Shown in pieces: positions 5,855 to 46,803 of a stretch of 64,000 bases of DNA. Position 1 is the first letter of the stretch. The number at the start of each line of letters is the position of its first letter. The notes beneath the pieces are model-generated. The model did no database searches and was not told the DNA's origin. It was given only the letters and a program-made list of their open reading frames with translations. The position numbers and the translations under genes are program-made. Source of the DNA: Macrostomum lignano (Eukaryota); NCBI GenBank assembly GCA_002269645.1, contig NIVC01000319.1:248001-312000 (forward strand). Reading direction: 5' to 3'.

Positions 5855-7170
5855 AATAGCTACACTATACACTGGCTCTAGGGCACATTTTTCTAGAGGA
5901 TTATTCTATATCAGATAATTTATCACTTTTCTGACCATTTTTTCAGGTCTATTATACACTAGAATTTTTTGCATATATGTAAGATTTGGGAGTGGGAGGC
6001 CTAAGAAGATAGACAATTTAGTTTGTAGGCCTAACTTTAAAGTATAATAAAGATCTATACAGCTAAAAAAATCTTTAATTTCTTATTTTATCTTATGAAT
6101 ATCTTAAATAATGTTTTATAGGCCCCTATCTTAAATAATTATGACATAAAATATCATATCATATAGCCTTTATATATACTTGTAATATATTGATTTAATG
6201 ATTAGAATATAAATCTAGGCTAGCAATTATAGATAGTCAGTAGGCCTAGTCAGTATTATATTGATAGGCCAAATATTTTTAATGCATAAAATTCTAAAAA
6301 CTAAAAATTAGTATCATTTTTAATCGTTAAAAATCACATATTGATCATTGTCTTTGAATTTATTTTAATGATTAAATAAAAATATAATATATTAAATTAT
6401 CCAATAAGTTTTTTAAATGATCATTTTAAACCTACACGATAGGCCTATGGGCTATGGCACTAAGGTGCAGCACTGATTAGAGCACAAGGGGATAGGGTGG
6501 TACTGAATCCACTGGCACTTATGGAAAAAATCTGACCTAGCAGAATCATTGAATATCTGGAAGGTTGGCAAAGAGTCAAATATGGACACTTGATAAAACT
6601 TGGTGAAACATCTATTAGCTAGCTTAAATTAATTATGTCTATTTAAGATTGCACAAGACACTGCATGAAGGCACTCTGCATGTCATTTACCTAGAGCTAG
6701 AGAACAGACCTGGAGCTTACTAAGCTCGCCTACTAGCTCCTCTAAGGTTGGAAATTCAGCTGCCAGCTGGCCCTTGGGGCTCATAAATCCAGTTGCCAAT
6801 GGCTATTTTTGGTTGACCATTGGCAACTAGCTAAATTCTTGAGAATGGAGATTTCCAAGGCTACATTTGAAAAGTAGAAATTTGTTCTCTTAACTCTAAG
6901 ATTGCTATCTATGCTGCAAATAATAACAAACTAACAATTCCATCATATGATCATATCAATTCATGATCATATCATATCATCATATCATGATCATGAATTG
7001 AACCCTCTAATGGCACTTTTATTACAATTACAAAATCATTTTTTGAAGTTGCCAGATTAGCCTCTGATTCCTAAAATCCAGTTGCCAATGAAATTTTCAA
7101 GGGGCCAAAAAACCCCATATGGCCCAAAAAACCCAGCCTACTAGAAGAAATTCCAATCAAAATCCTTCAG

Positions 7171-10100
7171 CAGGACCAGCCCCTGCTGTACATTGGCAAC
7201 ATTCCCTCCCGCTACCGGGCCAGGGACTTGCGCCGTTTCTTTGCCACCTCCGTGGAGTCGGGGGCGTTCGCCTGCTTCCATTTCCGACATCGACCTCAGC
7301 GCATTGCCGCTGCTGCATCAACTTCAGGAGCCGCGTCGTCTGGCAAGAAGGCGCCACGCCTGCTGTGCTGCTACGCTCGAGCCAGCTCGCCTCAGGCCGC
7401 CAATGAGGTGAGGACCGTCACAACTTGCATGGCTCAGCTGTCACCGAAGGCTGTTGTCCAAATTGCGATTGAGTTGGCGTGCGCCTCCAGTGCTATGAAA
7501 TGCCCTTTAAAGTTACAGCCCACATCAGTATGAGTGTGAAAACCCTGGAAATTCTCTAAACACTTTAGAACCCACCTAGTAGAGATACGAAATTGCTTCT
7601 TGAAACCCTGAAAGCGATTAAGGACTCACGGATCATCTCTAAAGTCAGAATAGTACGCTCGTAACCCTCTAATTTTTGGAGCTCCTCCCGACACTGGAAC
7701 CCCTCTAGTGACCCTGGAACCCTCTAGTGACCCTGCAACCCTCTAGTGACCCTGGAACCCTCTAGTGACCCTGGAACCCCTCTAGTGACCCTGGAACCCT
7801 CTAGTGACCCTGGAACCCCTCTAGTGACCCTGGAACCCCTTTAGTGACCCTGGAATTGGAACCCCTCTAGTGACCCTGGAACCCCTCTAGTGACCCTGGA
7901 ACCCTCTAGTGACCCTGGAACCCCTCTAGTGACCCTGGAACCCCTCTAGTGACCCTGGAACCCCTCTAGTGACCCTGGAACCCCTTTAGTGACCCTGGAA
8001 TTGGAACCCCTCTAGTGACCCTGGAACCCCTCTAGTGACCCTGGAACCCCTCTAGTGACCCTGGAACCCCTTTAGTGACCCTGGAACCCTCTAGTGACCC
8101 TGGAAACCCTCTAGTGACCCTGGAACCCCACTAGTGACCCTGGAACCCCTTTAGTGACCCTGGAACCCTTCTAGTGACCCTGGCACCTCTCTAATGACCC
8201 TGGAACCCCTTTAGTGATACCAAAGCATCCCTCTAGTGACTGTGGATTTCGTAATGAATCACAAAAACTAACAAGAGAATCTGGAACCGGAGCCTCTCCA
8301 TCGCTCTCCATCGCAGGTGATGAGGCTGCACAGCGGCAGCCAGTGGCGCGCCTACTCCGGCGTCAGGGAGCTGCCGCTCGGCCTGCGCTGCCTCATCTCC
8401 GTCTGCGACTCGGCCTCCGCCGCGGTGCCCGCCAGGGTGGCCGCTGATCTCCGGAGCCTGACGGGGCCGCAGTTGGCCAGGGCATTGAAGCGGCACGGCC
8501 TGCAGGTTGGTGGCGGCGCCGTCCCGTCTTCAAATTTGATGCTGCAACAGCAGATCTCACCCCTACGATAGCAGATCTCACCCCTGCGACAGCAGATCTC
8601 ACTATATGCATCTGCAGATCTCACCCCTGCAACAGCAGATCTCACTATATGCATCTGCAGATCTCACCGCTGCAACAGCAGATCTCACCCCTGCAACAGC
8701 AGATCTCACTATCTGCATCTGCAGATCTCACTCCTGCAACAGCAGATCTCACTATCTGCATCTGCAGATCTCACCCCTGCAACAGCAGATCTCACTATCT
8801 GCAACTGCAGACCTCACCCCTGCAACAGCAGATCTCACTCCTGCAGATCTCAGTCCAGACTCCAGTTATTAAGTTCAAACTACAAACTACAGTTAGCAAA
8901 GATCTGCTAACTCAGGGTTCAGATCTGCAATTGCAGAGGCTGAGATCTGCAGTAAAACTTTGCAATCTCTCCATGCAGGTGGGCGCCAGCGGCCGGCCGC
9001 AGCCTGTGGAGCTGTGCCCGCCAGCCTGCATGCCGCAGGGCAACGTTGGCACGCCAACCAGCCACTTCCTTGGCCTGGTGCAGCGCTGCCAGCTTCCTGC
9101 CGGCCTCATCGCCAGCCTGGGCCTGGATCTGCGCTCGGCCGGCAAGCGGCGGGGCAAATTCTCCGCCGTGCCCTTCGACTACGGCGGCGCCGTCCGAAGC
9201 TTCTCGACGTCTGCGCCGCCGCGGGTCGATCTTGATGAGGAAGATTCGGACGTGGCCGAAAATCATTTACGGCCAGACACTGCGGACGAGGAGGCCGGAC
9301 AAGCGGCTGGCGGCACGGATGATGAAGAGGAGGCTGAAGAGGAAGACGAGCCGGCCGAGGACTGGGAGCGGTTCGAGGCGCTTCACGACGATCCGCACAA
9401 CGTGGACCGGTGGAAAGAGCGCAAGTGAGTTTTATGGTGATGATGCGCTGCTTATGACTACTGCAGTTAGTAGTGTGATGGGAACATGCAATTTCTTTAT
9501 CAAAGTTGAAAATTGACCCAAAAACTGTAATAGGCTGACATGGTAGAGTGACAAGTAGTCAAGTGGAGTGACCAGTGGGAAACCATGAAGAGTGACAAGT
9601 AGTCAAGTGGAGTGACCAGTGGGAAACCATGAAGAGTGACAAGTAGACACCAGAGAGTGACAGGTAGACTGTAGACACCATAGAGTGGCAAATAGACACC
9701 ATAGAGAGTGACAAGTAGACACCATAGAGTGACAAGTAGACATCATAGTGACAAGTAGATACCATAGAGTGACAAGTAGACACCATAGAGTGACAAGTAG
9801 ACATCATAGAGTGACAAGCAGACACCAGAGAGAGTGACAAGCAGACACCAGAGAGAGTGACAAGCAGACACCAGAGAGAGTGACAAGCAGACACCAGAGA
9901 GAGTGACAAGCAGACACCAGAGAGAGTGACAAGTAGTAGAGTTGCTCGTTTAATTACTAGCAAATAAAAAAGCTTAAAATCAACATTTACGGCAAAAACC
10001 AACTCGTTTCAACCCACTAGGGCCGTCGTCAGAATATATTTTATCATTGAACGAAACAGTCAATATAAATAAGTAAACGATTGTACTATCTAAAGTGTCA

Positions 10101-11875
10101 AATTGAAAACGGGAGGGTAACAAACGTACGAAAGAACATCCACCATAGAGTGACAAGCAGACACCATAGAGTGACAAGTAGACAACCTAGGAAGTGACAG
10201 GTAGACATCCTAGACCTAGAGAGTGACAGGTGAACAACCTAGAGAGTGACAGGTGAACAACCTAGAGAGTGACAGGTGAACAACCTAGAGAGTGACAGGC
10301 GAACAACCTAGAGAGTGACAGACGAACAACCTAGAGAGTGACAGGCGAACAACCTAGAGAGTGACAGGCGAACAACCTAGAGAGTGACAGGAGAACAACC
10401 TAGAGAGTGACAGGCCCCCAGCGGAGTCCATTCCTTACTGCCGCAAATTCCGAAACAGATACGAGGAGCCGCTGGAAATCGTGTGGGAGAAGGGCGGGCC
10501 CGGCCTGGTGTGGTACACGGACGAGCAGTTCTGGCGCCAAGGCGAGAAACTCGAACTATTCGATGACCCAACCAACTACGACTGGGACCTGGACATGTCC
10601 GCCTACGAGGCCGCCGGGGACGCCGCGCCTGGAGACGCGGACGCGCGCGACCTGCTGGACATGCGGCGCTTCGGCGCGTTCGAGCGGCACACGCGCGGCT
10701 TCGGGTCCGACCTGCTCAGGCGGCAGGTGAGCGACTGGGAGGGGGGGATGAGGCTTTGAGCTTGGCTTCTTGGACTGAAGACTGGTGGCGGCCCGAACAA
10801 ATTGAATAGAGCTCAAAACATTTTAGTGAGAAGTTGACCCGATTAGAGTTGGAAGTGGACAAACAGTAGGAAATCAGGCTCGGTAGACATTGGAGTGCGC
10901 AGTAGGCTTAGAAGTAGACATACGGGAGGGAAAAGTACGAGTAGACGCAGTTGAGTGAGAAGTAGACATAGTTAAGTGTGAAGTAGACTCGGTTAAGTGT
11001 GAAGTAGATTCGGTTAAGTGAGAAGTAGACAGTTGAGTGAGAAGTAGACATAGTTAAGTGTGAAGTAGACTCAGTTGAGTGAGAAGTATACTTAGTTGAG
11101 TGAGAAGTAGACATAGTTGAGTGTGAAGTAGACTCAGTTAAGTGAGAAGTAGGCTCAGTTGAGTGAGAAGTAGATACAGTTGTGAGAAGTAGACACATTT
11201 CAGTGAGAAGTAGACAGTTGAGTGAGAAGTAGACACAGTTGAGTGAGAAGTAGACATAGTTAAGTGTGAAGTAGACTCAGTTGAGTGAGAAGTAGACAGT
11301 TGAGTGAGAAGTAGACATAGTTAAGTGTGAAGTAGACTCAGTTGAGTGAGAAGTAGACAGTTGAGTGAGAAGTAGACATAGTTAAGTGTGAAGTAGACTC
11401 AGTTGAGTGAGAAGTAGACTTAGTTGAGTGAGCAGTAGATTCAGTTAAGTGAGAAGTAGATAAGGTAGGTTCTGTCTCGCACCCGCAGGGCTGGGCGGGT
11501 CCGGGCTCGGCGGTTGGCGGCAGCGGCAGCGGAGGCGGCGGCCTGACGGAGCCGCTGTCGGCGGAGCCGCGCCCATCGCGCGCCGGCTTCGGCTACCGCG
11601 GCCCCGCACTGCTGCCCCGCGGCCACCCGACCTCCACTGACAAGTTCAATTCCAATGGCCTGACGCGCCGGGAAGCGGCGCTGGTGGCGCGCGCGCGAGC
11701 GACCGGCGCCTACGTGGCTGCGGCGCACGACCGGCCGGCAGTCCGGGCCGCCGTGGACCCCGGAGACAGCCTGCTGGTGCGGGCGAATCCCGACAGGCTG
11801 AAGTACCGCCCGGCTGCCGAGGCTGCCAGCGCCGCCGCTCATGCTGGAGGCCGCGGCGCCGGCAGTAGCAAATGA
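7171..11875 (+). CDS. GPATCH3: G-patch domain-containing protein 3 (about 508 aa plus unresolved start)
   Basis: Exons 7171-7407, 8317-8505, 8979-9424, 10459-10726, 11489-11875 join in frame at GT-AG sites (phases 0,0,2,0). Family motifs: LYIGNIP..LRRFF..FACFHFRHRP, MPQGNVGTP, WERFEALHDD, WEKGGPGLVWYTDEQFW, DWDLDMS, GAFERHTRGFG..LLRRQGW (G-patch), GFGYRG, DSLLVR..LKYR. No in-frame ATG upstream of 7171. Confidence 0.9.
7694..8240. repeat. 20-bp minisatellite (ggaacccctctagtgaccct) in GPATCH3 intron 1
   Basis: Tandem units visible directly; boundaries approximate. Confidence 0.95.
8545..8850. repeat. About 21-bp minisatellite (gcagatctcacccctgcaaca and variants) in GPATCH3 intron 2
   Basis: Tandem units visible directly; boundaries approximate. 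Confidence 0.9.
9540..10412. repeat. Two related 21-23-bp arrays (agagtgacaagtagacaccat; agagagtgacaggtgaacaacct) in GPATCH3 intron 3
   Basis: Arrays at about 9540-9935 and 10140-10412, separated by unique sequence. Confidence 0.9.
10910..11462. repeat. About 21-bp minisatellite (gttgagtgagaagtagacaca and variants) in GPATCH3 intron 4
   Basis: Tandem units visible directly; boundaries approximate. Confidence 0.9.
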
Positions 11876-11944: not shown

Positions 11945-12420
11945 TTCCGCCCCTCGGTCTCCGCCCCTCGGTCTCCGCCCCTCGGTCTCCGCCCCTCGGT
12001 CTCCGCCCCTCGGTCTCCGCCCCTCGGTCTCCGCCCCTCGGTCTCCGCCCCTCGGTCTCCGCCCCTCGGTCTCCGCCCCTCGGTCTCCGCCTCTCGGTCT
12101 CCGCCCTTCGGTCTCCGCCCCTCGGTCTCCTCCCTCCCGGTCTCCGCCCCTCGGTCTCCTCCCTCCCGGTCTCCGCCCCTCTGTCTCCACTCCTCTGTCT
12201 CCACTCCTCGGTCTCCACTCCTCGGTCTCCGCCCCTCTGTCTCCGCCCCTCGGTCTCCGCCCCTCTGTCTCCGCCCCTCGGTCTCCGCCCCTCGGTCTCC
12301 GCCCTCGGTCTCCGCCCTCGGTCACCGCCCCCGGTCTCCGCATCTCTGTCTTCGCTTCTCGGTCTCCGCCCCTCGGTCTCCGCCCCTCAGGCTTCACCCC
12401 TCGGTCTCTGCCCTCTGCCT
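11945..12420. repeat. 14-bp minisatellite (cggtctccgcccct) just 3' of the GPATCH3 stop
   Basis: Tandem units visible directly. Confidence 0.95.
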
Positions 12421-12797: not shown

Positions 12798-13455
12798 GAG
12801 AGTCGGTTTTTGAGGAAGATTCAGGCGATTCTCCAGGAGAGTCGGTTTTTGAGGAAGATTCAGGCGATTCTCCAGGAGAGTCGGTTTCTTGAGGAAGATT
12901 CAGGCGATTCTCCAGGAGAGTCGGTTTCTTGAGGAAGATTCAGGCGATTCTCCAGGAGAGTCGGTTTTTGAGGAAGATTCACGCGATTCTCCAGGAGAGT
13001 CGGTTTTTGAGGAAGATTCAGGCGATTCTCCAGGAGAGTCGGTTTTTGAGGAAGATTCAGGCGATTCTCCAGGAGAGTCGGTTTTTGAGGAAGATTCAGG
13101 CGATTCTCCAGGAGAGTCGGTTTTTGAGGAAGATTCACGCGATTCTCCAGGAGAGTCGGTTTTTGAGGAAGATTCAGGCGATTCTCCAGGAGAGTCGGTT
13201 TCTTGAGGAAGAGGGGGCGATTCTCCAGGAGAGTCGGTTTCTTGAGGAAGAGGGGGGCGATTCTCCAGGAGAGTCGGTTTCTTGAGGAAGATTCAGGCGA
13301 TTCTCCAGGAGAGTCGGTTTCTTGAGGAAGAGGGGGCGATTCTCCAGGAGAGTCGGTTTTTGAGAAAGAGGGGTGCGATTCTCCAGGAGAGTCGGTTTTT
13401 GAGAAAGAGGGGGGCGATTCTCCAGGAGAGTCGGTTTTTGAGAAGGGGGCGATTT
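12798..13455. repeat. 39-40-bp minisatellite (gaggaagattcaggcgattctccaggagagtcggttttt)
   Basis: About 16 units, each containing the palindrome TCTCC-A-GGAGA; no unique spacers. Confidence 0.95.
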
Positions 13456-16603: not shown

Positions 16604-19600
16604 ATGAGCAGCCTGTGGTCCGCCTACCCGTCGGTGACGCAGCTTCGCCAGCTGCTTGATGACAAAGCTGAGGACGTTGACAGTCGTCAGAATGACCGGA
16701 CGCTGCTGCACCGGGCCGCGACAGACAACAAAATTGAGGTGATCCGTCTGTTGAAGGAGCACGGCGCCGATCTGAACGCCTTAAACAGCGCAGGCAAGTC
16801 GGCTCTCAACCTGGGCCTCGAGAAGCGCCACTTTGAGACCGTGGAGCTGCTGCTAGAGCTGGGAGCCGATCCTAACACTGCCACTGTGAACACGGAGTCG
16901 ACCCTGCACCAAGCGGCCGCAATCAAAGACTCCAGGTTCATCAGCCGACTGCTCGCACATGGAGCCAAATGCAATGCGCCGGATCGGTTGAACGACTGGC
17001 CAATCCATCGGGCCTCCCTAGAGGAGTACCTGGAGACGGTGGGCGTCCTCCTACATGAACACTCTGAGCACATCAACGTCATTGGCAACCGCGGACTCAC
17101 CCCACTGCACATCGCGGCCACAAACAGCAACGCGGAACTGTTTGCCGTACTTGTTGAGCACGGAGCCGACATTGCTGTTAAAGACTTGCAAGGACGGACG
17201 CCGCTTGATCTGGTGATCATGAACCAGGACAACGCAATCCTCGATACCTACGGGTATCTGCTGGCGAACAAGGTAGTCAAGTGTCCGGAAGCCGGAAGTT
17301 TCCGCACGGTTTTCAGCACGGACTCAGCTAGAAAGTTTTTAGACACTCTGACCAAGATTGACAACGAGTACAGGCGCACTTTCGTCCCAACGGACACAGA
17401 CATTGAGTACTTCCAAAACCGGCTGGATGAAGCAACCAACGAAATGCTATTGAGCTATATTGAGTCAGACGAACGAATCGACATCAACGAGTTTGTACAG
17501 ATCATAATCCGTGCTGTGAGCAACGGCTTGGTAGACGAAATCATCTCCAAGGACCTGGTGCCCAAGATAGCAGAGAGCATCTTTCGACATGTGCTCGTAT
17601 CTGAGAATGAGATTTTGCTGCAGGAACTCATGAATCTAGGAGTTCTGTGGGGCAAGATCGTTCAATTCTTGGAAAGTAACATAGTCGAGGTGTACGAGAA
17701 GACGCTTATTGCAAAGCGGGTGGGGATCCGAGGCCTGGTCTGGCGCGAGTGCCTTAAAGACGAAGATGATGAAGACGAAGACGAAGACCAGAAGCAACAA
17801 ACGAAAATCCTCGGTTCCGGCGAAAGCTTGCAAGAAGTGACGCAACGAGTCTCCTACGACAAGCTGCACATGCTAGTGTCCAAAACCACGAAACTGTGGC
17901 AGCTGAGGCACACCGACTTCATTGACGAACAGACGGATCGTTGCAACTTGGACTCGCCGATAGAAGTAATGAAGGACCCAGTCCGTACCCTGGCTATGTG
18001 GAGCGTGCTCACAGGCCGGTTTAAGTTAACGCCACACCTTCTGCGCCAAGAGCCGTACGATCTCATCCCACAGGCGCTTCTCATGGCTAAACTGCTTCGC
18101 TGCCTCAGCAACCTGCGAAGCATCGAGGACGTTTATAGAAACAAGGCAATAAATATGGCCAACACGTGCGAGGGGATCGCTATTCAAGCTCTGCGACGCA
18201 TTAAGGAATTCGACACGTCGCAGAACAACATTCTCACCATGGAGTACCTGAGGCTTCCGCTCCGATCCTACGGTGACTACGACGCCATCGACCTGGCCGC
18301 CAGGGGCGAGTCCAGCAGCTTCGTCACCATCGATGTGGTACAGGACACGTTAGACATGTTCTGGTACTCCGACTTCTTCTTCGTCCGCAGCAACGTCTGG
18401 AAGATGGAGGGCGCCATTCTCATGGGTTTCGTGCCGCCGCTCATGCTGCTCCTACCGCTGATCATGGAACGCTTCCGTAAAGAGTCGCCAACCTTTAAGA
18501 ATCCTGAGATCTTGCAGGACAGCAAGTTCGTGCAGGTGAAAAGTGCGTTGCACAGCCACAACGAGCATCACGGGCACGAGATGACAGGCGCAGAGGAGCG
18601 GCTCCTGCCGCAGCCACCTGAAGCGGAAGTGCCGCCCAAGAAGCCATCGTATGTGCGGCGAGTATTCAAAGAGTTAAACGCCTTCTATGATATCCCCTGC
18701 GTAAAATTTCGGTTCCACGTGACGGCGCACGTGATGTTTGTTCTGCTTCTGTCGTTCGTCGTGATGCGCCTATTCAACAAGAGGATGAGTGTGTCGGAGT
18801 GCATCTGCTACGTGTGTCTGCTGGGCTTTCTGGTGGAAGAAATTAACGAGATCTTCAAGAGCAAAAAGGACGAATCGCTCGCCTCCTACTTCTCGGATGG
18901 CTGGAACCTGATCGATCTGACGGCTATACTTTGTGGCATCATAAGCTTTGCGTTGAGGCTGGATGACGAAATTTCAGGAAAGTCTGAGCATGCTGAGAGT
19001 GTTCGATACTGGGCTCTGGTGCTGCTGTCAACAACCTGCCTGGTGTACTGGATTCGACTGCTATTCGTTTCGGTGATCTTGGAAAGCCTCGGCCCCAAGC
19101 TGAAGATGATGGCGCTCATGGTGAAGAAAGACTTCCTGCCATTCTTGTATATCCTGTTCATCCTGATGATCGGCTTCGGAGTTGTGTTCCAGGCGCTGCT
19201 GTACCCACCGACCAACTTTGGCACATCATCTCTGAGCCCAGGGGATACCGACAACGGCACAGAGGCGCAGGAGATCGCTGTGCGGATGTTCAGAACGACC
19301 TTCTTTATGATCGTCGGCGAGTACGGCCTGGATGACAAGACGAATCTCTGCAGTTCTCCGGATGCCAAAGAAGACTGCGTTCACGAGACAGGATCTCTGC
19401 TGGTTACTAACATCTTCATGGTCATCTACATCGTGATAGTCCAGATTCTTCTGCTCAACGTCATCGTGGCGATGTTTAGCGAGACAATTGACGCCGTGAA
19501 TCGCGAGTCAACCGCCATGTGGCAGTTCGAGAAGTACGACCTCACCCAGGAGTTCTTCATGCGCTCCAAGCTGCCGCCACCGTTCAACGTGCTGCTGGAG

Positions 19601-19966
19601 CTGCGCCGCCTCATCGCGTGGATCATCAGGCGCTTCCGGCGAAACAAGAGTAGCGACGGCAAGCGAACGGCACCGCGCAGCACCGAGAAGAGCGAAGTCG
19701 AGGTGTTCCTCTACTACTTGTACTACCAGGCCATCAGCTGCAGGGGCCAGCGCTCCACCTTCCGAGGCGTCGTGATCGACGAGGAAGATCTGGACGAGGG
19801 CAACAAGATAATCTTTGAGCAGATCAAGGACATTCAAAAGGAGCTGAAGCGCCTGCGGAAACTGGAGACGCTCGTCCAGAAGATGAGCAACAGCAGTTCA
19901 GGACCGAGCAGGCAGCTGCCCCCGCATCGGCAGCTGGCTGCCCTGGCTGAAAACCAGGACACCTGA
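16604..19966 (+). CDS. Intronless ankyrin-repeat TRPM-like cation channel, 1120 aa
   Basis: Single uninterrupted ORF. Five ankyrin repeats plus a partial sixth (about 16694-17240). TRPM MHR4-like motif PVRTLAMWSVL...ALLMAKLLR, pre-S1 AIDLAA..FV...VQDTLDMFW, FYDIPCVKF, six hydrophobic segments, pore FFMIVGEY with pore-loop Cys pair, ILLLNVIVAMF, TRP box WQFEKY..LPPPFNV, C-terminal coiled coil. No NUDT9-H or kinase domain. Confidence 0.92.
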   Translation: MSSLWSAYPSVTQLRQLLDDKAEDVDSRQNDRTLLHRAATDNKIEVIRLLKEHGADLNALNSAGKSALNLGLEKRHFETVELLLELGADPNTATVNTESTLHQAAAIKDSRFISRLLAHGAKCNAPDRLNDWPIHRASLEEYLETVGVLLHEHSEHINVIGNRGLTPLHIAATNSNAELFAVLVEHGADIAVKDLQGRTPLDLVIMNQDNAILDTYGYLLANKVVKCPEAGSFRTVFSTDSARKFLDTLTKIDNEYRRTFVPTDTDIEYFQNRLDEATNEMLLSYIESDERIDINEFVQIIIRAVSNGLVDEIISKDLVPKIAESIFRHVLVSENEILLQELMNLGVLWGKIVQFLESNIVEVYEKTLIAKRVGIRGLVWRECLKDEDDEDEDEDQKQQTKILGSGESLQEVTQRVSYDKLHMLVSKTTKLWQLRHTDFIDEQTDRCNLDSPIEVMKDPVRTLAMWSVLTGRFKLTPHLLRQEPYDLIPQALLMAKLLRCLSNLRSIEDVYRNKAINMANTCEGIAIQALRRIKEFDTSQNNILTMEYLRLPLRSYGDYDAIDLAARGESSSFVTIDVVQDTLDMFWYSDFFFVRSNVWKMEGAILMGFVPPLMLLLPLIMERFRKESPTFKNPEILQDSKFVQVKSALHSHNEHHGHEMTGAEERLLPQPPEAEVPPKKPSYVRRVFKELNAFYDIPCVKFRFHVTAHVMFVLLLSFVVMRLFNKRMSVSECICYVCLLGFLVEEINEIFKSKKDESLASYFSDGWNLIDLTAILCGIISFALRLDDEISGKSEHAESVRYWALVLLSTTCLVYWIRLLFVSVILESLGPKLKMMALMVKKDFLPFLYILFILMIGFGVVFQALLYPPTNFGTSSLSPGDTDNGTEAQEIAVRMFRTTFFMIVGEYGLDDKTNLCSSPDAKEDCVHETGSLLVTNIFMVIYIVIVQILLLNVIVAMFSETIDAVNRESTAMWQFEKYDLTQEFFMRSKLPPPFNVLLELRRLIAWIIRRFRRNKSSDGKRTAPRSTEKSEVEVFLYYLYYQAISCRGQRSTFRGVVIDEEDLDEGNKIIFEQIKDIQKELKRLRKLETLVQKMSNSSSGPSRQLPPHRQLAALAENQDT

Positions 19967-26869: not shown

Positions 26870-29800
26870 TGTAATTGCCTCGCAATATTATTATCAATTT
26901 GTTCTAAATAGGCGAGTGAGTTATATTATAAATGTACATCTTGTGTCGCATGAGTCATGTACGCCGTATTATTGATTTGTACGCATAAAACCTCAAATAT
27001 ATATATATCGCTAACTGGCCAGTTTGGGCCCCGTGATTTATTTTTCTCGCTCAGCTTAACACGCGGCCTTCAGACTTTACAGTGGCGTCGCAAGCAAGCC
27101 CACTTGGTCCAGTCACTCATGGCTCAATTCATCTCACTGCCACCCCTGAGCAATTCAGCACTAGTGCAGATCAACAGAATGCCGGTAAACGCTGGAACAA
27201 ATGGTCCGATCATTTTTGTGACTTTATCGAAGCGTCAGGCATCAAAGACGAAACTCAGAAGTGCAAGCTCCTGGCCTACACGGCCGGCAGAGAAATCGCG
27301 CAAATCATTAAAGACCTGCCAGATGACAAGAAAGACAGCCTCGAAACTCTGCTCGCAGCAATAAAAGAGCACTTCAAGGAGCGCAACAACATCGTATTTG
27401 CCCGCTATCAGTTTCGTCTATGCGTTCAGCAAACCGGAGAGCCAGTGGACTCCTGGTACTCCCGACTCAACTCAGCGGCCGAGACATGCGAGTTCTCAGC
27501 ACTCAAGGACTCCCTAATCAGAGATCAGATAGTGGCGACATGCTGCTCCGATAAACTTCGGCGAAGATTGCTGCAGGAGTCCAACATCTCTCTCGGCGAT
27601 GCGTTGAGACAAGCGCGCGCGTTTGAAGCAGCAGAAGAGCAGGCCACGGCCATTGAGAACTCCAGTAGCATCGCAGCAGTGCACAGAGCGGCACCGAAGC
27701 AGTTCAGAGACAGCGGAACGCGCCCGAACAGTCAGCGGGTCCCTGGTGGCCAAGCAAACAGCGGCCCAACCAGCTGCTATCGATGCGGCGAACGCGGGCA
27801 CAGCTCATGCAACGCGGCAAAAGGCAAAACCTGCCTGGCATGCGGCAAGCCAAACCATCTCGCCAAAGCATGCAGACAACGCAGGCCTCAAACAAGCTCC
27901 AGCATCAACGCCGTAGCGGACAAAGAAGCTGAGGCGGTCTTCATCGATCACGATTCGCTAAATGAGGAGGCCTTCACTATCCAGTCGCAAAAAACGGCAC
28001 CCAGACGCAACTCCGCCAACACTAATCTGAGGATCGAGGGCAAGGACTTCATCGTACTCGTGGATAGTGGAGCCAGCTGCAACGTCATGAGCGAGGAGAA
28101 CTTCCGGCGGCTAAGAAATGTTCGACTGCGCAGCGCCATCCATCCAATTTTCAGCTACGGGTCCACAACGCCTCTCCAAGTCCTGGGTGTCGCTGACCTC
28201 AACGTGAGCACCGCAGCTAGCAGACAACTAGCTTCATTCTACATCACCAAAGGCTGTGGAACCACACTACTCGGTCGAGAAACCGCTTTCAACATGGGAA
28301 TTCTGCACATCCAACATCCAACAGTTGAAGTCAACTCGGTGCAGCCCACGGAAAATCTAGCCGCATCAGGTATTCAAGAGCTGTTCTCCAAGTACAGAGA
28401 TGTCGACCAAGATCTTCCAACCGAACTCCGCATCAGCAGCATCCTTGGTGAGTTTAAGTCAATCTTCGAAGGCCTTGGCTGCGTTAAGGGCGTCGAGGTC
28501 GACGTTCGTCTTCGACCAGAAGCTGTCCCAGTCTGTCACCCACCCTCCAGAGTTCCCGTACACCAGCGGTCGGCGGTCATCGCGGAACTTCAGGCTCTCC
28601 TCGACCAAGGAATCATCGAGCGCGTCAACGGCCCGTCACCGTGGGTCTCCCGCATGGTTGTCGTCCCGAAAGAAGGCGGTGGCATCCGCATCTGCCAAGA
28701 CCTGCGCGACGTCAACTCATTTGCCGTGCCAGAAAAGCAGCCCATCCCAACCTTTGAGGAGATCACGGACGAAATGGCGGGTTCCACGGTATTCAGCGAG
28801 CTCGACATCGTAAAGGCTTTCCACCAAATTCTTGTCAAACCGGAATCCCGTCACGTCTTCACCTTCAGCACCCCACTGGGTCTCATGCGACTGACCAGAC
28901 TCAGCATGGGATTCACCAACGCATCCGAGATATTGCAAAGGGTTATGACAGGCGTCCTGAGCGGCCTTGACGGTGTCCGATGGGCACACGATGACATCAC
29001 CGTCTTTGCGAGCACGATGGAAGAGCACAACATCCGACTAAAACAGTGCTTCAAGCGCCTACAAGACCATGGAATCACACTCAATCCGAACAAGTGTCGC
29101 CTGGCACAGCCTTTCATCAATTTTCTTGGTATGCGCATCAGCGCACGAGGCGTTCAGCCTGCAGCCGAGAAGATCAAGGCCGTCAAAGACTTTAAGGAGC
29201 CAACAAATGTGTCAGAGCTGCGCTCATTCCTCGGTTTGGCCACCTACCTGTCCAGGTTCGTTCCGAACTTCTCAGATCTGACGCAGCCAATGCGAGAACT
29301 GCTAAAAAAAGGTCATAAATGGTGCTGGTCAGAAAGGCAACAAAAAGCATTCCTGCAAACAAGAGCAGCGATCTGCAATGAGAGCGTCCTGGCCTTCTTT
29401 GACGTGAATCTCCCAACAGAAGTTCATGTGGACGCCTCGCCAGTCGGCCTGGGTGCCATTCTCAGCCAAGTGGATGAGAAAGGCGTTCGCAAACCGGTCG
29501 CCTTCGCCAGCAGGTCGCTCACGCCAGTTGAGCAGCGATACGCTCAAATTGAACGCGAGGCGCTTGCGGTGAAATTCGGGTGCCTACGTTTCGAGCACTA
29601 CCTCAGCGGCTGCCCAGATCTCACAGTCATCACGGATCACCGCCCATTAGTCCCGCTTTTTCAACCTGGTTCCAGGCCTCCACCAAGGATTGAACGGATG
29701 GCTTTAAGAGTGCAGCACCTCAAATTCAAGCTCATCTATCAGCCGGGGCCACAGAATCCAGCGGATGTCCTCAGTAGACAACCTGAAATGCAGACAAAGG

Positions 29801-31462
29801 ACAACCCCGGGGAACTCCTGGACAGACGCTTCATTAACGCAGTCGCCATCGGCTCTACTCCGAAAGGACTGAACTTTGCAACAATTCAGGAGGCTTCAAA
29901 GTCAGACGGCACGATCCAAGCAGCTCTATCAGCTCTACGAACTGGCCAATGGGACAAGCAGAACAGAGATCTTCGAGCTTTGTCCTGCCTGCAGCAGGAG
30001 CTTTCAGAACATGACGGCGTGCTACTACGGAGCTCGTTGATCGTGATCCCGAGCAGCTTACGTCGGACGGTGCTCCAGCTGGCACATGCAGGCCACCAAT
30101 GCTGCCGAAAAACTATGGACAGACTGCAAACCAAAGTATGGTGGCCAGCGATGAGAAGCGACTGCCAGACGTTCGTCCAGTCTTGCTTCCCCTGCCAAGC
30201 GACATCGCCGAAGAGCCTCGCACCGCCACCACTCTCACCGTCGCAACTTCCGGACGGAGCATGGCTGGTTCTTGGAATGGACTTTTACGGCCCAGTCCAA
30301 GGGAAAATGCTCCTGGTGACAACCGATCTCTTTTCAAAATTTCCCGAGGTCGACATAGTCAGCTCAACATCAGCAGAGGCAGTGCTTCCGCATCTCCGGA
30401 CTCTGTTTAGCAGATACGGCATCCCGTTGGAAATCGTCAGCGACAATGGACCTCCGTTTAACTCGGCAGAATTCACAAACTTCCTCTCAGAGTTCGGCAT
30501 CAAGCATCGCCGGATCTGTCCGCTGCACCCCGAGGCGAACGGAGCGACCGAGCGAGTCAACAGGTGCATCAACAAGGTCATCAGAGCGGCCATCGCAGAA
30601 GGACGCAACTGGCGCACCGCACTCGACGACTGGCTGCTCGCTCATCGCGTCACTCCGCACTCGGCAACCGGCGTGGCACCAGCCGAACTGCTCATGGGCC
30701 GAGCTCTCAACGACGGCCTCCCGTCAATCCAACCATCGCAACCTGTGCAGCACGACCGAGCCGAACTCGCAAAGCGTCACGAGGCCTACAACAACCAGAT
30801 GGCAGCAGGTTTCAACCGCTCCAGGAGGGCCAAGGCAGCCAATGTCAAGCCGGGTTCGGCGGTTCTCCGCAAGCGGACGAGACGCACGAAAATTCAAACG
30901 CCTTTCGAGCTCGAACCCTGGACCGTCACCGACAAGCGAGGCGATTCCTACGTCCTGCGGCAAGGCGACCGGACATGCACTCGCCACCTGACGCACATCC
31001 GGCCTCTGACAGCGACCGAGGACCCACCACCAGAAGCGGACGCTGGCGCCGCCTCGCCGGAGCGCGGCATTGCTGAGAGGCCGCACCCGAGAGCGGCCAA
31101 GGACAAGCCTATCAGCTACAGAGTTTGACGGGTTTTGACGGGTAACTGGTGCTAAGGGCTGAGACAAGTGTTTTTTACCCTTAATGTTTTATTCCTTTTT
31201 CCTTATCCTTTTAATCCGCATTTTTGAGCTTTTTCGTTTTTGGGGAGAAGTGTAATTGCCTCGCAATATTATTATCAATTTGTTCTAAATAGGCGAGTGA
31301 GTTATATTATAAATGTACATCTTGTGTCGCATGAGTCATGTACGCCGTATTATTGATTTGTACGCATAAAACCTCAAATATATATATATCGCTAACTGGC
31401 CAGTTTGGGCCCCGTGATTTATTTTTCTCGCTCAGCTTAACACGCGGCCTTCAGACTTTACA
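26870..31462 (+). mobile_element. Full-length Ty3/Gypsy LTR retrotransposon
   Basis: LTRs 26870-27081 and 31251-31462 (212 bp each, TGTAA...TTACA, no difference seen). TSD CAGCA at 26865-26869 and 31463-31467. PBS-like TGGCGTCGCAAG at 27083. Polypurine tract GGGGAGAAG at 31242-31250. Confidence 0.98.
27119..31128 (+). CDS. Gag-Pol polyprotein (Gag with 2 CCHC knuckles, protease, RT, RNase H, integrase)
   Basis: CYRCGERGHSSC and CLACGKPNHLAKAC; LVDSGAS; WAHDD; VDASPVGLGA; HAGH..CFPC; MDFYGP, SDNGPPF, EANGATER. The order PR-RT-RH-IN is Gypsy type. The likely ATG at 27119 is one base out of frame with the 4-kb open frame. Confidence 0.93.
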
Positions 31463-40822: not shown

Positions 40823-43800
40823 TCAGTAGCACATGCCAGCACAGGCTGGACAGTCAGTGTCGGCAACTGCGGCAGCCTCGCTGCCCTGGCGGCACTCCGC
40901 ATGGAAGTAGTGGCCGCAGTTGAACAGCAGCAGGTGCGCCTCGCCGGCGTCAGGCGGGGCCTCCCCCATCCGCCTGGCAACCAGCAGGGGAGTTCGGCAG
41001 CGAACGCACAGATTGCTGCTGGGACTCACAGACATTGGGCGGCGGGCGAACGCGATCTGGGGATTTTAAATTGTACGGGATTTGGGCTGTTGCCTATGTC
41101 ACTGAGACCTATTCTCTAATCTCACTGAGACCTATTCTCTAATCTCACTGAGACCTATTCTCTAATCTCACTGAGGCCTATTCTCTAATCTCACTGAGAC
41201 CTATTCTCTAATCTCACTGAGACCTATTCTCTAATCTCACTGAGACCTATTCTCTAATCTCACTGAGGCCTATTCTCTAATCTCACTGAGGCCTATTCTC
41301 TAATCTCACTGAGACCTATTCTTTAATCTCACTGAGACCTATTCTCTGATCTCACTGAGAACTATTCTCTAATCTCACTGAGGCCTATTTTGTAATCTCA
41401 CTGAGACATATTCTCTAATCTCACAAAGACATATTCCTTAATCTCACTGAGACATATTCCCTAATCTCACTGAGACCTATTCTCTAATCTCACTGAGACC
41501 TATTCTCTGATCTCACTGAGAACTATTCTCTAATCTCACTGAGACATATTCTCTAATCTGACTGAGACCTATTCTCTAATCTCACTGAGACCTATTCTCT
41601 AATCTCACTGAGACATATTCTCTAATCTCGCCGAGACCTATTCTCTAATCTCACTGAGACATATTCTCTAATCTCACTGAGGCCTATTCTCTAATCTCAC
41701 TGAGACCTATTCTCTAATCTGACTAGTCCAAACATCCGTGATTCCCCGTACGAGCGTGAAAGCCCACCTGCTTGTGAATGAGGTTCTGGCAGTCCTGAGA
41801 CTGGATGGTGGCGCAGCCCTGGGTGAGAGCGGTGCCAACCCGGTAGTCGCTGAGCAGCTTCACAATGGAGTTTCTGAGGCCGGGCACCACCATGCCGGGC
41901 TGGATCTTGTGGATGAGGATGGCCGGGTCCACCTCGCTGCCAGAGTTCTCCAGCAGGGTGGTGATCAGCCTGGGCCTGTCGCTGGCGGCCTCGGCGGCGG
42001 CCATCCACAGCTCCGGGTCCGCTTCGTCGCGGCAGAATTGCACCTGAGAGACGCGAGTTCGAAAGCGATTTTTGAATTCTTCGAAGAATATGAAAAAAGG
42101 TAAGGAAATTCACCCACCACTCGGTCGAACTGCTGCTCATCCAGAAGCAGGTTCAGGGCGTCCCGCCGCCGGCCCATCCTGGCCAGGATGTACACGGTCT
42201 CCTCCGTGAGCTGCCGGTCAGCGCACAGCGCCAGCGCCAGCTCGTACTTGAAGCCGCTCGACGAGCGCAGGAACGGCAGCAGCTTCTGCCTGGCGTGGTC
42301 GGCGTACAGCTCCACCATCTTGTCCGCGTGCTTCTCCACCCTGGCCGGGTCCTTCAAGTGCACAGCGTCCAGATAGTCGCAGAGCAGGCCGGAATTCGAT
42401 GACAGCTCGGAGATGATGGAGCTGATGGAGAAGCCAGCCTGCCATTGTGAACGGGTACAATTACAGCCATATTTACAGTCACAACTACAGCCATATTTAC
42501 AGTCACAATTACAGCCATATTTACAGTCACAACTACAGCCATATTTACAGTCACAATTACAGCCATATTTACAGTCACAATTACAGCCATATTTACAGTC
42601 ACAATTACAGCCATATTTACAGTCACAACTACAGCCGTATTTACAGTCACAATTACAGCCGTATTTACAGTCACAATTACAGCCATATTTACAGTCACAA
42701 TTACAGCCATATTTACAGTCACAATTACAGCCATATTTACAGTAACAATTACAGCCATATTTACAGTCACAATTACAGCCATATTTACAGTCACAACTAC
42801 AGCCATATTTACAGTCACAACTACAGCCATATTTACAGTCACAACTACAGCCATATTTACAGTCACAATTACAGCCATATTTACAGTAACAATTACAGCC
42901 ATATTTACAGTCACAATTACAGCCATATTTACAGTCACAATTACAGCCATATTTACAGTCACAATTACAGCCGTATTTACAGTCACAATTACAGCCATAT
43001 TTACAGTCACAATTACAGCCATATTTACAGTCACAACTACAGCCATATTTACAGTCACAATTACAGCCATATTTACAGTCACAACTACAGCCATATTTAC
43101 AGTCACAACTACAGCCATATTTACAGTCACAACTACAGCCATATTTACAGTCACAATTACAGCCATATTTACAGTCACAATTACAGCCATATTTACAGTC
43201 ACAACTACAGCCATATTTACAGTCACAACTACAGCCATATTTACAGTCACAATTACAGCCATATTTACAGTCACAATTACAGCCATATTTACAGTCACAA
43301 TTACAGCCATATTTACAGTCACAATTACAGCCATATTTACAGTCACAATTACAGCCATATTTACAGTCACAATTACAGCCATATTTACAGTCACAATTAC
43401 AGCCATATTTACAGTCACAATTACAGCCATATTTACAGTCACAATTACAGCCGTATTTACAGTCACAACTACAGCCAAATCTCCAATTTCTCCGCTCCCC
43501 TACAATTACAGCCAAATTACAGCCAAATTACAGCCAAATTACAGGCACAACTACAGCCAATTTCATCTGAGCGACCTGATCATCCAGCAGCATCTGCAGG
43601 GTCCGCTCCCGGTTGATGTTGAACAGCAGTGGCAGTTTGTTCACCACGTGGCTGTGCAGGCGGTGCCGCCGCACCAGAGCGAATGCGTCGCAGCTGCGCA
43701 GCTTGAGCAGGATGCTCAGCGTCTTCTCGTGCTCACCCGACAGCTCGTACAGCCGGGCCAGACAGCGGTTCAGAATTTGGTCGTTCGGCTGCCGGCTCAG

Positions 43801-46800
43801 GTCCTCAGCCACCACCTGGGCGGTTCGGGACAGCAAAAAAGTAGGGAAAAGCTTAGTCAATGCTGTCAGTTGATTGCTTAATCATTTAGATTTCAGCTCA
43901 CCCGAGTCACAGCTCGAACGCTAAACAGGTTGCTAGGCCAGGAGTTAATAAGCTCGAGGAACTGCTCTCTGTCGGTTTTGAACACTTCGTTTAGCACCAA
44001 GTCGTACACGCTGGTGTCCAGCTGGGGCTTGGATTTCGGCAGGTGTCTACAGGTGAGTTTTGAATACAGCATTATTAACACCACACCACTCCCAATGTGT
44101 ACACTGTGGCCCAACCCACTCCTAATGTGGTTCTGTCTCAGCCACCCCACACTCCCAATGCCCCAGCCACCCCACTCCCAATGCCCCAGCCACCCCACTC
44201 CCAATGCCCCAGCCACCCCACTCCCAATGCCCCAGCCACCCCGCTCCCAATGCCCCAGCCACCCCACTCCCAATGCCCCAGCCAGCCCACTCCCAATGCC
44301 CCAGCCACCCCACTCCCAATGCCCCAGCCAGCCCACTCCCAATGCCCCAGCCACCCCGCTCCCAATGCCCCAGCCACCCCACCCAGCTTCAGGACGAACC
44401 TGGCCAGCGCACTGGTGCAGCCGGCCTGGTGAAATTGGTACGCCATGGCCTCCCATTCCTCCTTGCCGGATAGGACAGTCTGGCAGAGCTCAGCGGCCTG
44501 GCCGAACTGCCCGACAGACAGCAGGTGATCAATGTACTTCCGGCCGACGCTGGCCGCAGTGAACTCCCCTATCGAGCCGCCTTGTTGGACATCGTCGAGG
44601 GCCTGCTTGAATTTGCCGCGCGACAGCAGCCACTGCAGATGGTCGGACCTGTCCCGCTGCTGGGCGCAGATGATGTCCTTGGGGCACACAATAAAGTACA
44701 TGCCCTCTGAGCGAAGTTGCTCAAACCGAAAGTTTGCTGGGCTGTAGCGCTCGAAACCGCGCACCTGGAATTGCCAGGTCAGCCCTGGTTACCAACTGCC
44801 TCGCTTTGCAGAAGCGAGAAGTTTGAAGTGATAAGCTTAAAGCAGACTGTTGGACGCAACAAGGACTGCAGCCTACTAGACCCGGCCACTGCAATCTACT
44901 AGACCCGGCCACTGCAACCTACTAGACCCGGCCACTGCAGCCTACTAGACCCGGCCACTGCAGCCTACTAGACCCGGCCACTGCAGCCTACTAGACCCGG
45001 CCATTGCAGCCTACTAGACCCGGCCACTGCAGCCTACTAGACCCGGCCACTGGAGCCTACGAGACCCGGCCACTGCAACCTACTAGACCTGGCTACTGCA
45101 ACCTACTAGACCCGGCCACTGCAGTCTACTAGACCCCTCGGTCACCTTGAGCTCCTCAATCGCGAGCTCCACGTAGGTGTCGATGCCGGGCTCCACCAGG
45201 TGCAGCTGCGGCTTCTCCTTTTCCTTCTGGCTGAGCAGCAGCAGCTCCTTGCCGAAGCCGCAGATGCCGCAGACGGTCATCGGGAAGCTGAAGCTGGCCA
45301 CGATCTGGCCGACTCTTCGGCCGCTGTTCGGGTCCGGGGCGATGCGGCAGATGTACACGCTGCGGCGGAAGGCGGCGATGAAGTTCGCCTCATCGGAGGC
45401 CTGCAATGGAGGGCCCGGGGCGTCCGAAACTCAAAGGAAGGCGTAAAGATATAGGTCAAAGGATGGGTTAGAGAATGGGTCAAAGGATGGGTTAGAGATT
45501 GGGTCAAATGATGGGTTAGAGATTGGGTCAAAGGATGGGTTAGAGATTGGGTCAAAGGATGGGTTAGAGAATGGGTCAAAGGATGGGTTAGAGATTGGGT
45601 CAAAGGATGGGTTAGAGATTGGGTCAAAGGATGGGTTAGAGAATGGGTCAAAGGATGGGTTAGAGATTGGGTCAAAGGATGGGTTAGAGAATGGGTCAAA
45701 GGATGGGTCAAAGGATGGGTCAGAGGATGGGTCAGAGGATGGGTTAGAGAATGGGTCAAAAAATGGGTCAGAGGATGGGTCAGAGGATGGGTTAGAGAAT
45801 GGGTCAAAGGATGGGTTAGAGAATGGGTCAAAGGATGGGTTAGAGAATGGGACAAAGGATGGGTCAAAGGATGGGTCAGAGGATGGATTAGAGAATGGAT
45901 TAGAGAATGGGTCAAAAAATGGGTCAGAGGATGGGTCAGAGGATGGGTTAGAGAATGGGTCAAAGGATGGGTTAGAGAATGGGTCAAAGGATGGGTTAGA
46001 GAATGGGACAAAGGATGGGTCAAAGGATGGGTCAGAGGATGGATTAGAGAATGGATTAGAGAATGGGTCAAAAAATGGGTCAGAGGATGGGTCAGAGGAT
46101 GGGTTAGAGAATGGGTCAAAGGATGGGTCAGAGGATAGATTAGAGAATGGGTCAGAGAATGGGTCAGAGGATGGATTAGAGAATGGGTCAAAAAATGGGT
46201 CAGAGGATGGGTCAGAGGATGGGTTAGAGAATGGTCAAAGGATGGGTCAGAGAATGGATTAGAGAATGGGTCAAAGGATGGGTCAGAGGATGGATTAGAG
46301 AATGGGTCAAAGGATGGGTCAGAGGATGGGTCAAATAATGAGTCGAAAAATGGGTCAGAGGATGGATTAGAGAATGGGTCAAAGGATGGGTCAGAGGATG
46401 GGTCAAATAATGAGTCGAAAAATGGGTCAGAGGATGGATTAGAGAATGGGTCAAAGGATGGGTCAGAGGATGGGTCAGAGAATGGGTCAAATAATGAGTC
46501 GAAAAATGGGTCAGAGGATGGGTCAGAGGATGGGTTAGAGAATGGGTCAGAGAATGGGTCAGAGGATGGATTAGAGAATGGGTCAAAGGATGGGTCAGAG
46601 GATGGGTCAGAGGATGGGTCAGAGAATGGGTCAAATAATGAGTCGAAAAATGGGTCAGAGGATGGGTCAATGAATGGGTTAGAGAATGGGTCAAAGGATG
46701 GGTCAGAGGATGGGTCAAAGGATGGGTCAATAATAACAATAATAATTGATTACACCTGTCCCAATGGGCAGATGTGCAACGACAGCTCAGCCTGGGGGGT

Positions 46801-46803
46801 CGC

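What the first reader, a model, noticed from the sequence alone, without database searches (positions are those of the whole stretch)
7119..7200. GPATCH3 has no in-frame genomic start codon; a spliced-leader AUG could supply it
Seen: the conserved N-terminal motif (QDQPLLYIGNIP) begins right after ccttCAG at 7170. The frame upstream reaches a TAA near 7072 with no ATG, and the nearby ATGs (7088, 7119) are out of frame with no donor before the acceptor. The candidate acceptors (CAG ending at 7170, 7173, 7179) are all phase 0. Established: flatworm spliced leaders end in AUG, which can serve as initiator Met. Inference: SL-AUG joined here gives M-(Q)DQPLLYIGNIP, so a conserved gene would depend on trans-splicing for its start codon.
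Basis: partly seen in the sequence, partly recalled or inferred. Interest (0 to 1): 0.72.

Follow-up and report, generated by a model that had tools for sequence, protein, structure and literature searches.

The report
Flatworm gene borrowing its start codon
A conserved Macrostomum lignano gene (GPATCH3-like) has no start codon of its own in the genome and most likely gets its AUG from the spliced leader added by trans-splicing, a mechanism already known in flatworms, so this is a probable new example and not a new principle.

Summary
The window is Macrostomum lignano (Mlig_3_7, contig NIVC01000319.1). The GPATCH3-like reading frame is closed by TAA at 7072-7074 and has no in-frame ATG before the conserved N-terminus. 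ATG 7088 and ATG 7119 are out of frame. No GT lies between them and the CAG ending at 7170.

Codon usage and GC content switch from non-coding to coding at 7171. CTTCAG at 7165-7170 is the only match in 1.2 kb to the published M. lignano trans-splice acceptor motif [T/C]TNCAG. The species' single 35-nt spliced leader ends in ATG. Joined at 7171 it is in frame and gives M-QDQPLLYIGNIP, close to where other flatworm orthologues place their Met.

Three independently assembled gene copies are identical here, including the A6 run, so an assembly frameshift is unlikely. All three are annotated 5'-partial by a pipeline that trims the leader before calling ORFs.

I could reach no RNA read showing the leader-exon junction, so the case is circumstantial (about 0.77). 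The mechanism has been known since Cheng et al. 2006 and is noted for Macrostomum. This is a new member of a known kind, of modest interest.

The parts
7072..7074 (+). In-frame TAA that closes the GPATCH3 reading frame upstream. There is no ATG between it and the conserved N-terminus.
7075..7170 (+). Proximal part of the presumed outron, which trans-splicing would remove. Its 5' limit is unknown. It is open in frame but non-coding in composition.
   Evidence: GC 0.41 and GC3 0.41. Codon log-odds mean -0.31, below every 32-codon coding window of the training set. No GT in 7088-7170.
7088..7144 (+). Upstream ATG in frame 2 with an 18-codon ORF ending at TAG. It would be discarded with the outron.
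7119..7406 (+). Upstream ATG in frame 0 that opens a 95-codon ORF overlapping exon 1 out of frame. It would be translated only from RNA that is not trans-spliced.
7126..7131 (+). A6 run. A5 here would put ATG 7119 in frame. It is identical in all three assembled copies.
7165..7170 (+). CTTCAG, the predicted spliced-leader trans-splice acceptor. It matches the published M. lignano motif [T/C]TNCAG and is the only match on this strand in 6001-7200. Together with CAG 7171-7173 it forms a tandem CAGCAG.
7171..7407 (+). Exon 1, coding from its first base (QDQPLLYIGNIPSRY...ANE), with phase 0 at both ends. With the leader's AUG the protein starts MQDQPLLYIGNIP.
   Evidence: GC 0.64, GC3 0.71, codon log-odds +0.88. 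Homology. Donor GAG|gtgagg.
8317..8505 (+). Exon 2
   Evidence: matches PAA85535.1
8979..9424 (+). Exon 3
10459..10726 (+). Exon 4, with the acceptor aaacag|A as in the public annotation. My first guess of 10414 would add 15 residues that are absent from the annotated protein and from orthologues.
11489..11875 (+). Exon 5, carrying the second half of the G-patch and the stop TGA at 11873-11875.
6784..7090 (.). Three copies of an AGTTGCCAATG(G/A) element containing CCAAT: 6791-6802 (+), 6817-6828 (inverted) and 7079-7090 (+). They may be promoter elements for a short outron. This is speculative.
   Evidence: D2, I4

Best explanation
The GPATCH3-like gene of Macrostomum lignano is transcribed from a nearby promoter as a pre-mRNA whose 5' part is an outron containing the out-of-frame ATGs 7088 and 7119. 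The 35-nt spliced leader (…TTGCATG) is trans-spliced to the acceptor CTTCAG|CAG at 7170|7171, possibly with minor use of the tandem CAG at 7173. The outron is discarded, and the leader's 3'-terminal AUG lands in phase 0 directly before CAG GAC CAG. It then serves as the initiator codon of a 509-aa protein, MQDQPLLYIGNIP….

Shown:
- the gene's identity;
- the absence of a genomic in-frame ATG;
- the acceptor motif;
- the switch in coding potential at 7171;
- identity of the three copies;
- the leader sequence of the species (from the literature).

Inferred:
- that the leader is really joined here;
- that its AUG is the codon used.
For: 1. The organism is M. lignano. The window is identical to NIVC01000319.1. 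The species has one spliced leader, CGGTCTCTTACTGCGAAGACTCAATTTATTGCATG. Between 30 and 39% of its genes are trans-spliced, and conserved genes are enriched among them.
2. CTTCAG at 7165-7170 fits the top trans-splice acceptor motif [T/C]TNCAG. It is the only such motif on this strand in 6001-7200. The hexamers ending at 7173 (CAGCAG) and 7179 (GACCAG) do not fit.
3. There is a sharp composition boundary at 7171. GC is 0.41 upstream and 0.64 downstream, and GC3 is 0.41 and 0.71. Mean codon log-odds is -0.31 for 7075-7170, lower than all coding windows, against +0.88 for exon 1. The six codons 7171-7188 all score between +1.2 and +2.3.
4. The frame is closed by TAA 7072 with no ATG. The upstream ATGs are out of frame, and there is no GT between them and the acceptor.
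5. Only 9 GT[AG]AG sites lie in the 7.17 kb upstream, the nearest at 5979. All ATG-plus-phase-0-donor candidates are more than 4 kb away and score as non-coding.
6. Leader plus exon 1 reads ...ATG CAG GAC CAG in frame. The resulting Met lies within about 3 residues of the Met of other flatworm orthologues.
7. Three separately assembled copies (L001-L003) are identical across 7000-7230, including the A6 run.
8. All three copies are annotated '5' partial' (PAA85535.1, PAA64337.1, PAA77525.1). The annotating pipeline trimmed leader sequence before mapping and then called ORFs with TransDecoder. A gene started by the leader's AUG should come out exactly this way, and an RNA-supported upstream ATG exon should not.
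9. The mechanism is established. The leader AUG is in frame in 28% of trans-spliced S. mansoni mRNAs and is required by more than 40 cDNAs (Cheng et al. 2006, as cited). All reported flatworm leaders end in ATG. The Macrostomum leader's ATG is flagged as a start codon.
Against: - I could inspect no RNA read or cDNA showing the leader joined at 7171. The public protein collections hold no RNA-derived ORF of this gene, and gene-level trans-splicing tables were not in the papers held.
- The deposited CDS begins at 7189 (YIGNIP), 18 nt inside the exon, in all three copies. I cannot explain this firmly. My guess is that the assembled transcript was 5'-truncated because leader-containing reads do not map end-to-end.
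- The polypyrimidine tract before 7170 is weak.
- A distant cis-spliced 5' exon cannot be excluded from DNA alone.
- A relative (L004) and all other orthologues seen carry their own ATG, so M. lignano would be the exception.
Confidence: 0.77

Rival explanations
1. A cis-spliced upstream exon, not annotated, carries the ATG and is joined to the acceptor at 7170.
For: The acceptor would serve cis-splicing equally well. There are 7.2 kb of unannotated upstream sequence in the window, and a few ATG…GT[AG]AG phase-0 candidates exist at 1451-2951.
Against: All candidates are more than 4 kb away, AT-rich, and score as non-coding, with mean log-odds from -0.35 to -1.13. The only GT[AG]AG within 4 kb is at 5979. 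No 100-nt window within 300 nt upstream of 7170 reaches 50% GC, and upstream GC never exceeds 0.55, against 0.64 in exon 1. The RNA-seq-guided annotation of three copies found no such exon and left the CDS 5'-partial. In the relative L004 the Met and the YIGNIP strand lie in one exon.
Confidence: 0.09
2. The mRNA is not trans-spliced, or only partly, and translation starts at a near-cognate codon in frame. Candidates are CUG 7183 or 7186, or AUU/AUC/AUA in 7117-7164.
For: In-frame CTG CTG sits immediately before the annotated start at 7189. CCAAT-containing repeats about 85 nt upstream of 7170 could place a transcription start close to the exon.
Against: Non-AUG initiation is rare and inefficient. 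The out-of-frame AUGs 7088 and 7119 would capture scanning ribosomes on any transcript that starts upstream of them. A leader ending in AUG and a fitting acceptor give a simpler route. Codons 7171-7182 already look coding.
Confidence: 0.05
3. The A6 run at 7126-7131 is an assembly error or a polymorphism. With A5, ATG 7119 would be the in-frame start, giving MAQKPSLLEEIPIKILQQDQ….
For: Homopolymer indels are the commonest long-read error. The resulting 28-residue distance to the IP motif is within the range seen in orthologues.
Against: Three separately assembled copies that differ elsewhere all show A6. The 17-codon leader scores as non-coding at -0.20, and GC stays at 0.40 up to 7170. All three copies would have to carry the same error.
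Confidence: 0.03
4. Exon 1 is no longer translated. The protein starts at the in-frame ATG 8320 in exon 2, or the copies are decaying.
For: ATG 8320 (VMRLHSG) is the first genomic in-frame ATG.
Against: Exon 1 encodes the most conserved block of the family, with invariant I12, P13, L21, R22, F37, H38, R42 and P43. It has full coding codon usage and is intact in three copies.
Confidence: 0.03

Closest known systems
Schistosoma mansoni mRNAs that use the spliced leader's 3'-terminal AUG as initiator methionine (Cheng, Cohen, Ndegwa & Davis 2006, J Biol Chem 281:733; seen through)
   Same: The flatworm leader ends in AUG. The acceptor is in phase 0 with the ORF. The genome has no in-frame ATG upstream of the conserved protein. 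The leader would supply the Met.
   Different: The species is a free-living macrostomorph and the gene is different. In S. mansoni the use of the AUG was shown with cDNAs and translation assays. Here there is only genomic and annotation evidence.
slORFs, ORFs created by leader addition (slORFfinder, Song et al. 2023, PMC9851317)
   Same: It is the same concept. The start codon lies in the leader, and the ORF is invisible to genome-only annotation.
   Different: That study's slORFs in nematodes, Oikopleura and trypanosomes mostly use near-cognate NUG codons inside the leader and were called from ribosome footprints. Here the codon is a canonical AUG at the very 3' end of the leader, and the ORF is a conserved protein rather than a new one.
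Ordinary M. lignano trans-spliced genes (Ustyantsev & Berezikov 2021, PMC8629364; Wudarski et al. 2017, PMC5730564)
   Same: The acceptor motif [T/C]TNCAG is the same. The gene is conserved and apparently monocistronic, with no same-strand gene within 10 kb upstream.
   Different: Most such genes keep their own ATG downstream of the acceptor. This one has none. Neither paper's main text treats the leader ATG as a source of start codons; I searched the main text only.

Membership tests
Flatworm mRNAs initiated at the spliced-leader AUG | The host's spliced leader ends in AUG. | tested here: met
   The window is M. lignano. The leader sequence ends …TTGCATG. I took the leader from the literature. 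It is not present in the window.
Flatworm mRNAs initiated at the spliced-leader AUG | A trans-splice acceptor lies in phase 0 with the conserved ORF. | tested here: met
   CTTCAG|CAG is at 7170|7171, and leader plus exon reads ATG CAG GAC in frame.
Flatworm mRNAs initiated at the spliced-leader AUG | There is no genomic in-frame ATG between the upstream stop and the conserved N-terminus. | tested here: met
   TAA at 7072-7074, and no ATG in frame up to 7407. The same holds in all three copies.
Flatworm mRNAs initiated at the spliced-leader AUG | The leader is physically joined to this acceptor in mature mRNA. | not testable with these tools
   No RNA reads or leader-read tracks were reachable. 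Indirect support only: a 5'-partial CDS from a pipeline that trims the leader.
Flatworm mRNAs initiated at the spliced-leader AUG | Translation starts at the leader AUG. | not testable with these tools
   This needs N-terminal proteomics, ribosome profiling or a reporter.
GPATCH3 (G-patch domain-containing protein 3) orthologues | Full-length similarity to GPATCH3 proteins, including the N-terminal IP…LR.FF…F.CFHFRHRP block. | tested here: met
   E-values of 5e-53 to 1e-40 against GPATCH3 proteins of cnidarians, arthropods, flatworms and vertebrates, with 82-99% coverage for most. Invariant N-terminal columns are shown.
GPATCH3 (G-patch domain-containing protein 3) orthologues | A C-terminal G-patch domain (PF01585). 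| tested here: inconclusive
   The Pfam G-patch hit covers residues 384-431 at 19.8 bits, below the cut-off of 22. That scan used my first-guess model with exon 4 starting at 10414, so the numbering is 15 residues higher than in the final model. The domain here has a glycine-rich insertion and is split by intron 4. Most homologues carry PF01585.

The most novel reading that the evidence does not exclude
ATG 7119 is the real start, and the ribosome or the RNA polymerase slips by one base on the A6 run (CCC AAA AAA CCC, 7123-7134) to enter the GPATCH3 frame. The gene would then be expressed by programmed frameshifting or transcriptional slippage rather than by trans-splicing. In a milder variant, RNA that is not trans-spliced is translated from ATG 7119 into a 95-aa out-of-frame product, so that leader addition acts as an on/off switch for GPATCH3 protein.
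Probability: 0.03. Interest if true: 0.55.

Novelty: new member of a known kind. Interest (0 to 1): 0.3.

Why it matters
If confirmed, GPATCH3 protein synthesis in M. lignano depends entirely on trans-splicing. That ties a conserved nuclear RNA-binding protein to leader addition.

The practical point is broader. The Mlig_3_7 pipeline trims the leader before calling ORFs. Genes of this kind are therefore deposited as '5' partial', or could be given a false downstream start. Neither main M. lignano trans-splicing paper mentions leader-AUG starts in its main text.

Re-annotating with the ATG kept, as Wiberg et al. 2023 did for two sister species, would repair an unknown number of gene models. M. 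lignano can be made transgenic, so it is a good system for testing leader-AUG initiation in vivo.

Tried and rejected
- **Leader gene in the window:** I searched for the 35-nt leader with up to 3 mismatches and found no match, so there is no leader gene or retro-copied leader here.
- **Public RNA-derived ORFs:** I looked for an ORF carrying the leader-encoded peptide (VSYCEDSIYCM) fused to the N-terminus. The word-index search returned nothing and did not even recover the known M. lignano protein, so it is uninformative. The exhaustive phmmer search with exon 1 found only P0001 above 50% identity.
- **Gene-level trans-splicing annotation:** I found none in the papers or supplements held. Wasik et al. 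2015 was not held.
- **Exon 4:** my first model (start 10414) disagreed with the deposited protein. I corrected it to 10459.
- **Paralogue comparison as a coding test:** the three copies are too similar (about 98-100%) for substitution patterns to tell coding from non-coding upstream of 7171.
- **Orthologue N-terminal lengths:** they do not discriminate between the leader-Met model (IP motif at residue 12) and the A5 model (residue 28). The range in orthologues is 6 to more than 100, with a median near 20.
- **Repeats:** the outron has no other copy in the window, so there is no sign that a transposon brought in the acceptor.
Full report
**What is there**

The window is Macrostomum lignano, assembly Mlig_3_7 (GCA_002269645.1), contig NIVC01000319.1. 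A locus fetched through the deposited protein is base-for-base identical to the window around the finding. Window position x corresponds to L001 position x + 2812.

The gene is a clear GPATCH3 orthologue. A five-exon model gives E-values of 5e-53 to 1e-40 against GPATCH3 proteins from cnidarians to vertebrates. After one correction, the model contains the whole deposited M. lignano protein PAA85535.1.

The exons are:
- exon 1, 7171-7407
- exon 2, 8317-8505
- exon 3, 8979-9424
- exon 4, 10459-10726
- exon 5, 11489-11875

**Checking the observation**

- The coding frame is closed by TAA at 7072-7074 and is open to the donor at 7407|7408. It contains no ATG.
- ATG 7088 is in another frame and stops after 18 codons.
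- ATG 7119 is in the third frame and opens a 95-codon ORF overlapping exon 1.
- The A6 run is at 7126-7131.
- AGs end at 7170, 7173 and 7179, all in phase 0.
- There is no GT between 7088 and 7170.

Only LLYIGNIP onward is conserved. QDQP is not.

**Where coding begins**

GC content jumps from 0.41 in 7075-7170 to 0.64 in exon 1, and third-position GC jumps from 0.41 to 0.71.

I built a codon log-odds score from confident coding and non-coding sequence of the same window. The 32 in-frame codons upstream of 7171 have a mean of -0.31. That is lower than every 32-codon window of the coding training set and lies in the upper 6% of non-coding windows. Exon 1 has a mean of +0.88, against a coding mean of +0.94. 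The six codons 7171-7188 each score between +1.2 and +2.3.

Coding therefore starts at about 7171. It does not start upstream, and it does not start at 7189, where the deposited CDS begins.

**The acceptor**

M. lignano has one 35-nt spliced leader, CGGTCTCTTACTGCGAAGACTCAATTTATTGCATG. The top motif at its trans-splice acceptors is [T/C]TNCAG, placed right at the junction (PMC8629364).
- CTTCAG at 7165-7170 fits that motif.
- It is the only match on this strand between 6001 and 7200.
- The hexamers ending at 7173 and 7179 do not fit.

Joining the leader at 7171 gives …TTGC ATG CAG GAC CAG CCC CTG CTG TAC, in frame.

The predicted N-terminus is MQDQPLLYIGNIP. Its Met lies within about three residues of the Met in Mesocestoides, Spirometra, Fasciola and Paragonimus orthologues, and in an unidentified relative.

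**Rival: a homopolymer error**

If the A-run were A5, ATG 7119 would be in frame. However, M. lignano is a recent polyploid, and the assembly holds three separate copies of this gene (L001, L002, L003). These copies differ by substitutions and microsatellite indels elsewhere, yet they are identical from about 7000 to 7230, A6 included. The 17-codon leader created by A5 also scores as non-coding. I give this rival about 3%.

**Rival: an upstream cis exon**

The 7.17 kb upstream of the acceptor holds only nine GT[AG]AG sites on this strand, the nearest at 5979. The few ATG-to-phase-0-donor candidates lie at 1451-2951 and all score as non-coding.

No 100-nt window within 300 nt upstream of 7170 reaches 50% GC, and upstream GC never exceeds 0.55, against 0.64 in exon 1.

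The Mlig_3_7 annotation was built from RNA-seq by genome-guided assembly. Leader sequence was trimmed from reads and transcripts before mapping, and ORFs were then called with TransDecoder (PMC5730564). Under that procedure an RNA-supported upstream ATG exon would give a complete CDS. A gene started by the leader's AUG would give a 5'-partial CDS. All three copies are deposited as 'partial'.

**An unexplained detail**

The deposited CDS starts at 7189 (YIGNIP) in all three copies, 18 nt inside the exon. No AG precedes 7189.

My best guess is a slightly 5'-truncated assembled transcript. Reads carrying leader sequence cannot map end-to-end, so coverage fades towards a trans-spliced 5' end. That would in itself be typical of a trans-spliced gene, but I could not test the guess.

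**What I could not get**

I found no read or cDNA showing the leader-exon junction.
- The public protein collections contain no RNA-derived ORF of this gene.
- The word-index search with the leader-encoded peptide was uninformative, because it did not even recover the known protein.
- Gene-level trans-splicing tables were not in the papers held.

**Comparison with what is known**

That the flatworm leader's terminal AUG can act as the initiator methionine was shown for Schistosoma mansoni in 2006. There it is in frame in 28% of trans-spliced mRNAs and is required by more than 40 cDNAs (Cheng et al., as summarised in PMC9851317).

All reported flatworm leaders end in ATG (PMC12582326). For Macrostomum, Wiberg et al. 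2023 state that the leader probably contains the final ATG as a translation start codon, and that they kept it on reads to avoid annotation problems (PMC10468722).

The main texts of the two principal M. lignano trans-splicing papers do not discuss leader-AUG starts. A catalogue for this species therefore seems to be missing, but the principle is not new.

All other orthologues inspected have their own ATG. These include the relative closest to M. lignano in the exon 3-4 region, which is an unidentified genomic contig (L004). Dependence on the leader would then be a derived state in the M. lignano lineage.

**Verdict**

It is a probable new member of a known kind, and its interest is modest. 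Its main value is practical: it points to a class of M. lignano gene models that are mis-annotated as 5'-partial.

Noticed in passing
window 7690-8240, 8541-8845, 9545-10414, 10940-11460, 11946-12413, 12798-13442: Every intron of the GPATCH3-like gene, and the sequence just downstream of it, is filled with a different minisatellite array. Periods are 14-44 nt, with 7-33 copies at 78-95% match.
   Followed up: partly
window 7189 (L001, L002 and L003 position 10001): The deposited CDS of all three gene copies starts at TAC 7189, 18 nt inside exon 1, with no AG in front. It is probably a 5'-truncated assembled transcript, but this remains unexplained.
   Followed up: partly
window 6791-6802, 6817-6828 (inverted), 7079-7090: Three copies of AGTTGCCAATG(G/A), which contains CCAAT. 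The last copy lies about 85 nt upstream of the acceptor. They may be promoter elements that would imply a very short outron.
   Followed up: no
window 10414-10458: An alternative in-frame acceptor (gtgacag|G at 10413|10414) would add 15 residues (PPAESIPYCRKFRNR) to exon 4. The deposited protein and the orthologues use 10459.
   Followed up: partly
window 26870-31462: An apparently young Ty3/gypsy-type LTR retrotransposon. It has an uninterrupted 1363-codon ORF with RT, RNase H and integrase domains. Its two flanking direct repeats are 100% identical over at least 212 nt (26870-27081 and 31251-31462). It is inserted into a 19-nt-period minisatellite array that continues on both sides.
   Followed up: partly
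window 16604-19963 (+): An intronless 1120-aa TRP-type channel gene with ankyrin repeats plus TRPM2-like and Ion_trans domains, and its own ATG. It was listed as a called gene in copy L002 but not in L001, the copy that is this window.
   Followed up: partly
window 41968-48356 (-) and 50732-52051 (-): Exons of a Vps41-like gene (beta-propeller and TPR-like region, with very long minisatellite-filled introns) and of a SMARCC/SWIRM-SANT-type chromatin-remodelling subunit.
   Followed up: no
L004 874-1218 (Logan ERR14224704, unidentified AT-rich genome): A GPATCH3 relative whose N-terminus is MDFEDYSLCYIGNIP, with a genomic ATG in the same exon as the conserved strand. It shows the presumably ancestral arrangement.
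   Followed up: partly
tool behaviour: The word-index protein search with a 153-aa query that contained 136 residues identical to P0001 returned no hit at all. Negative results from that tool for short queries therefore carry little weight.
   Followed up: no
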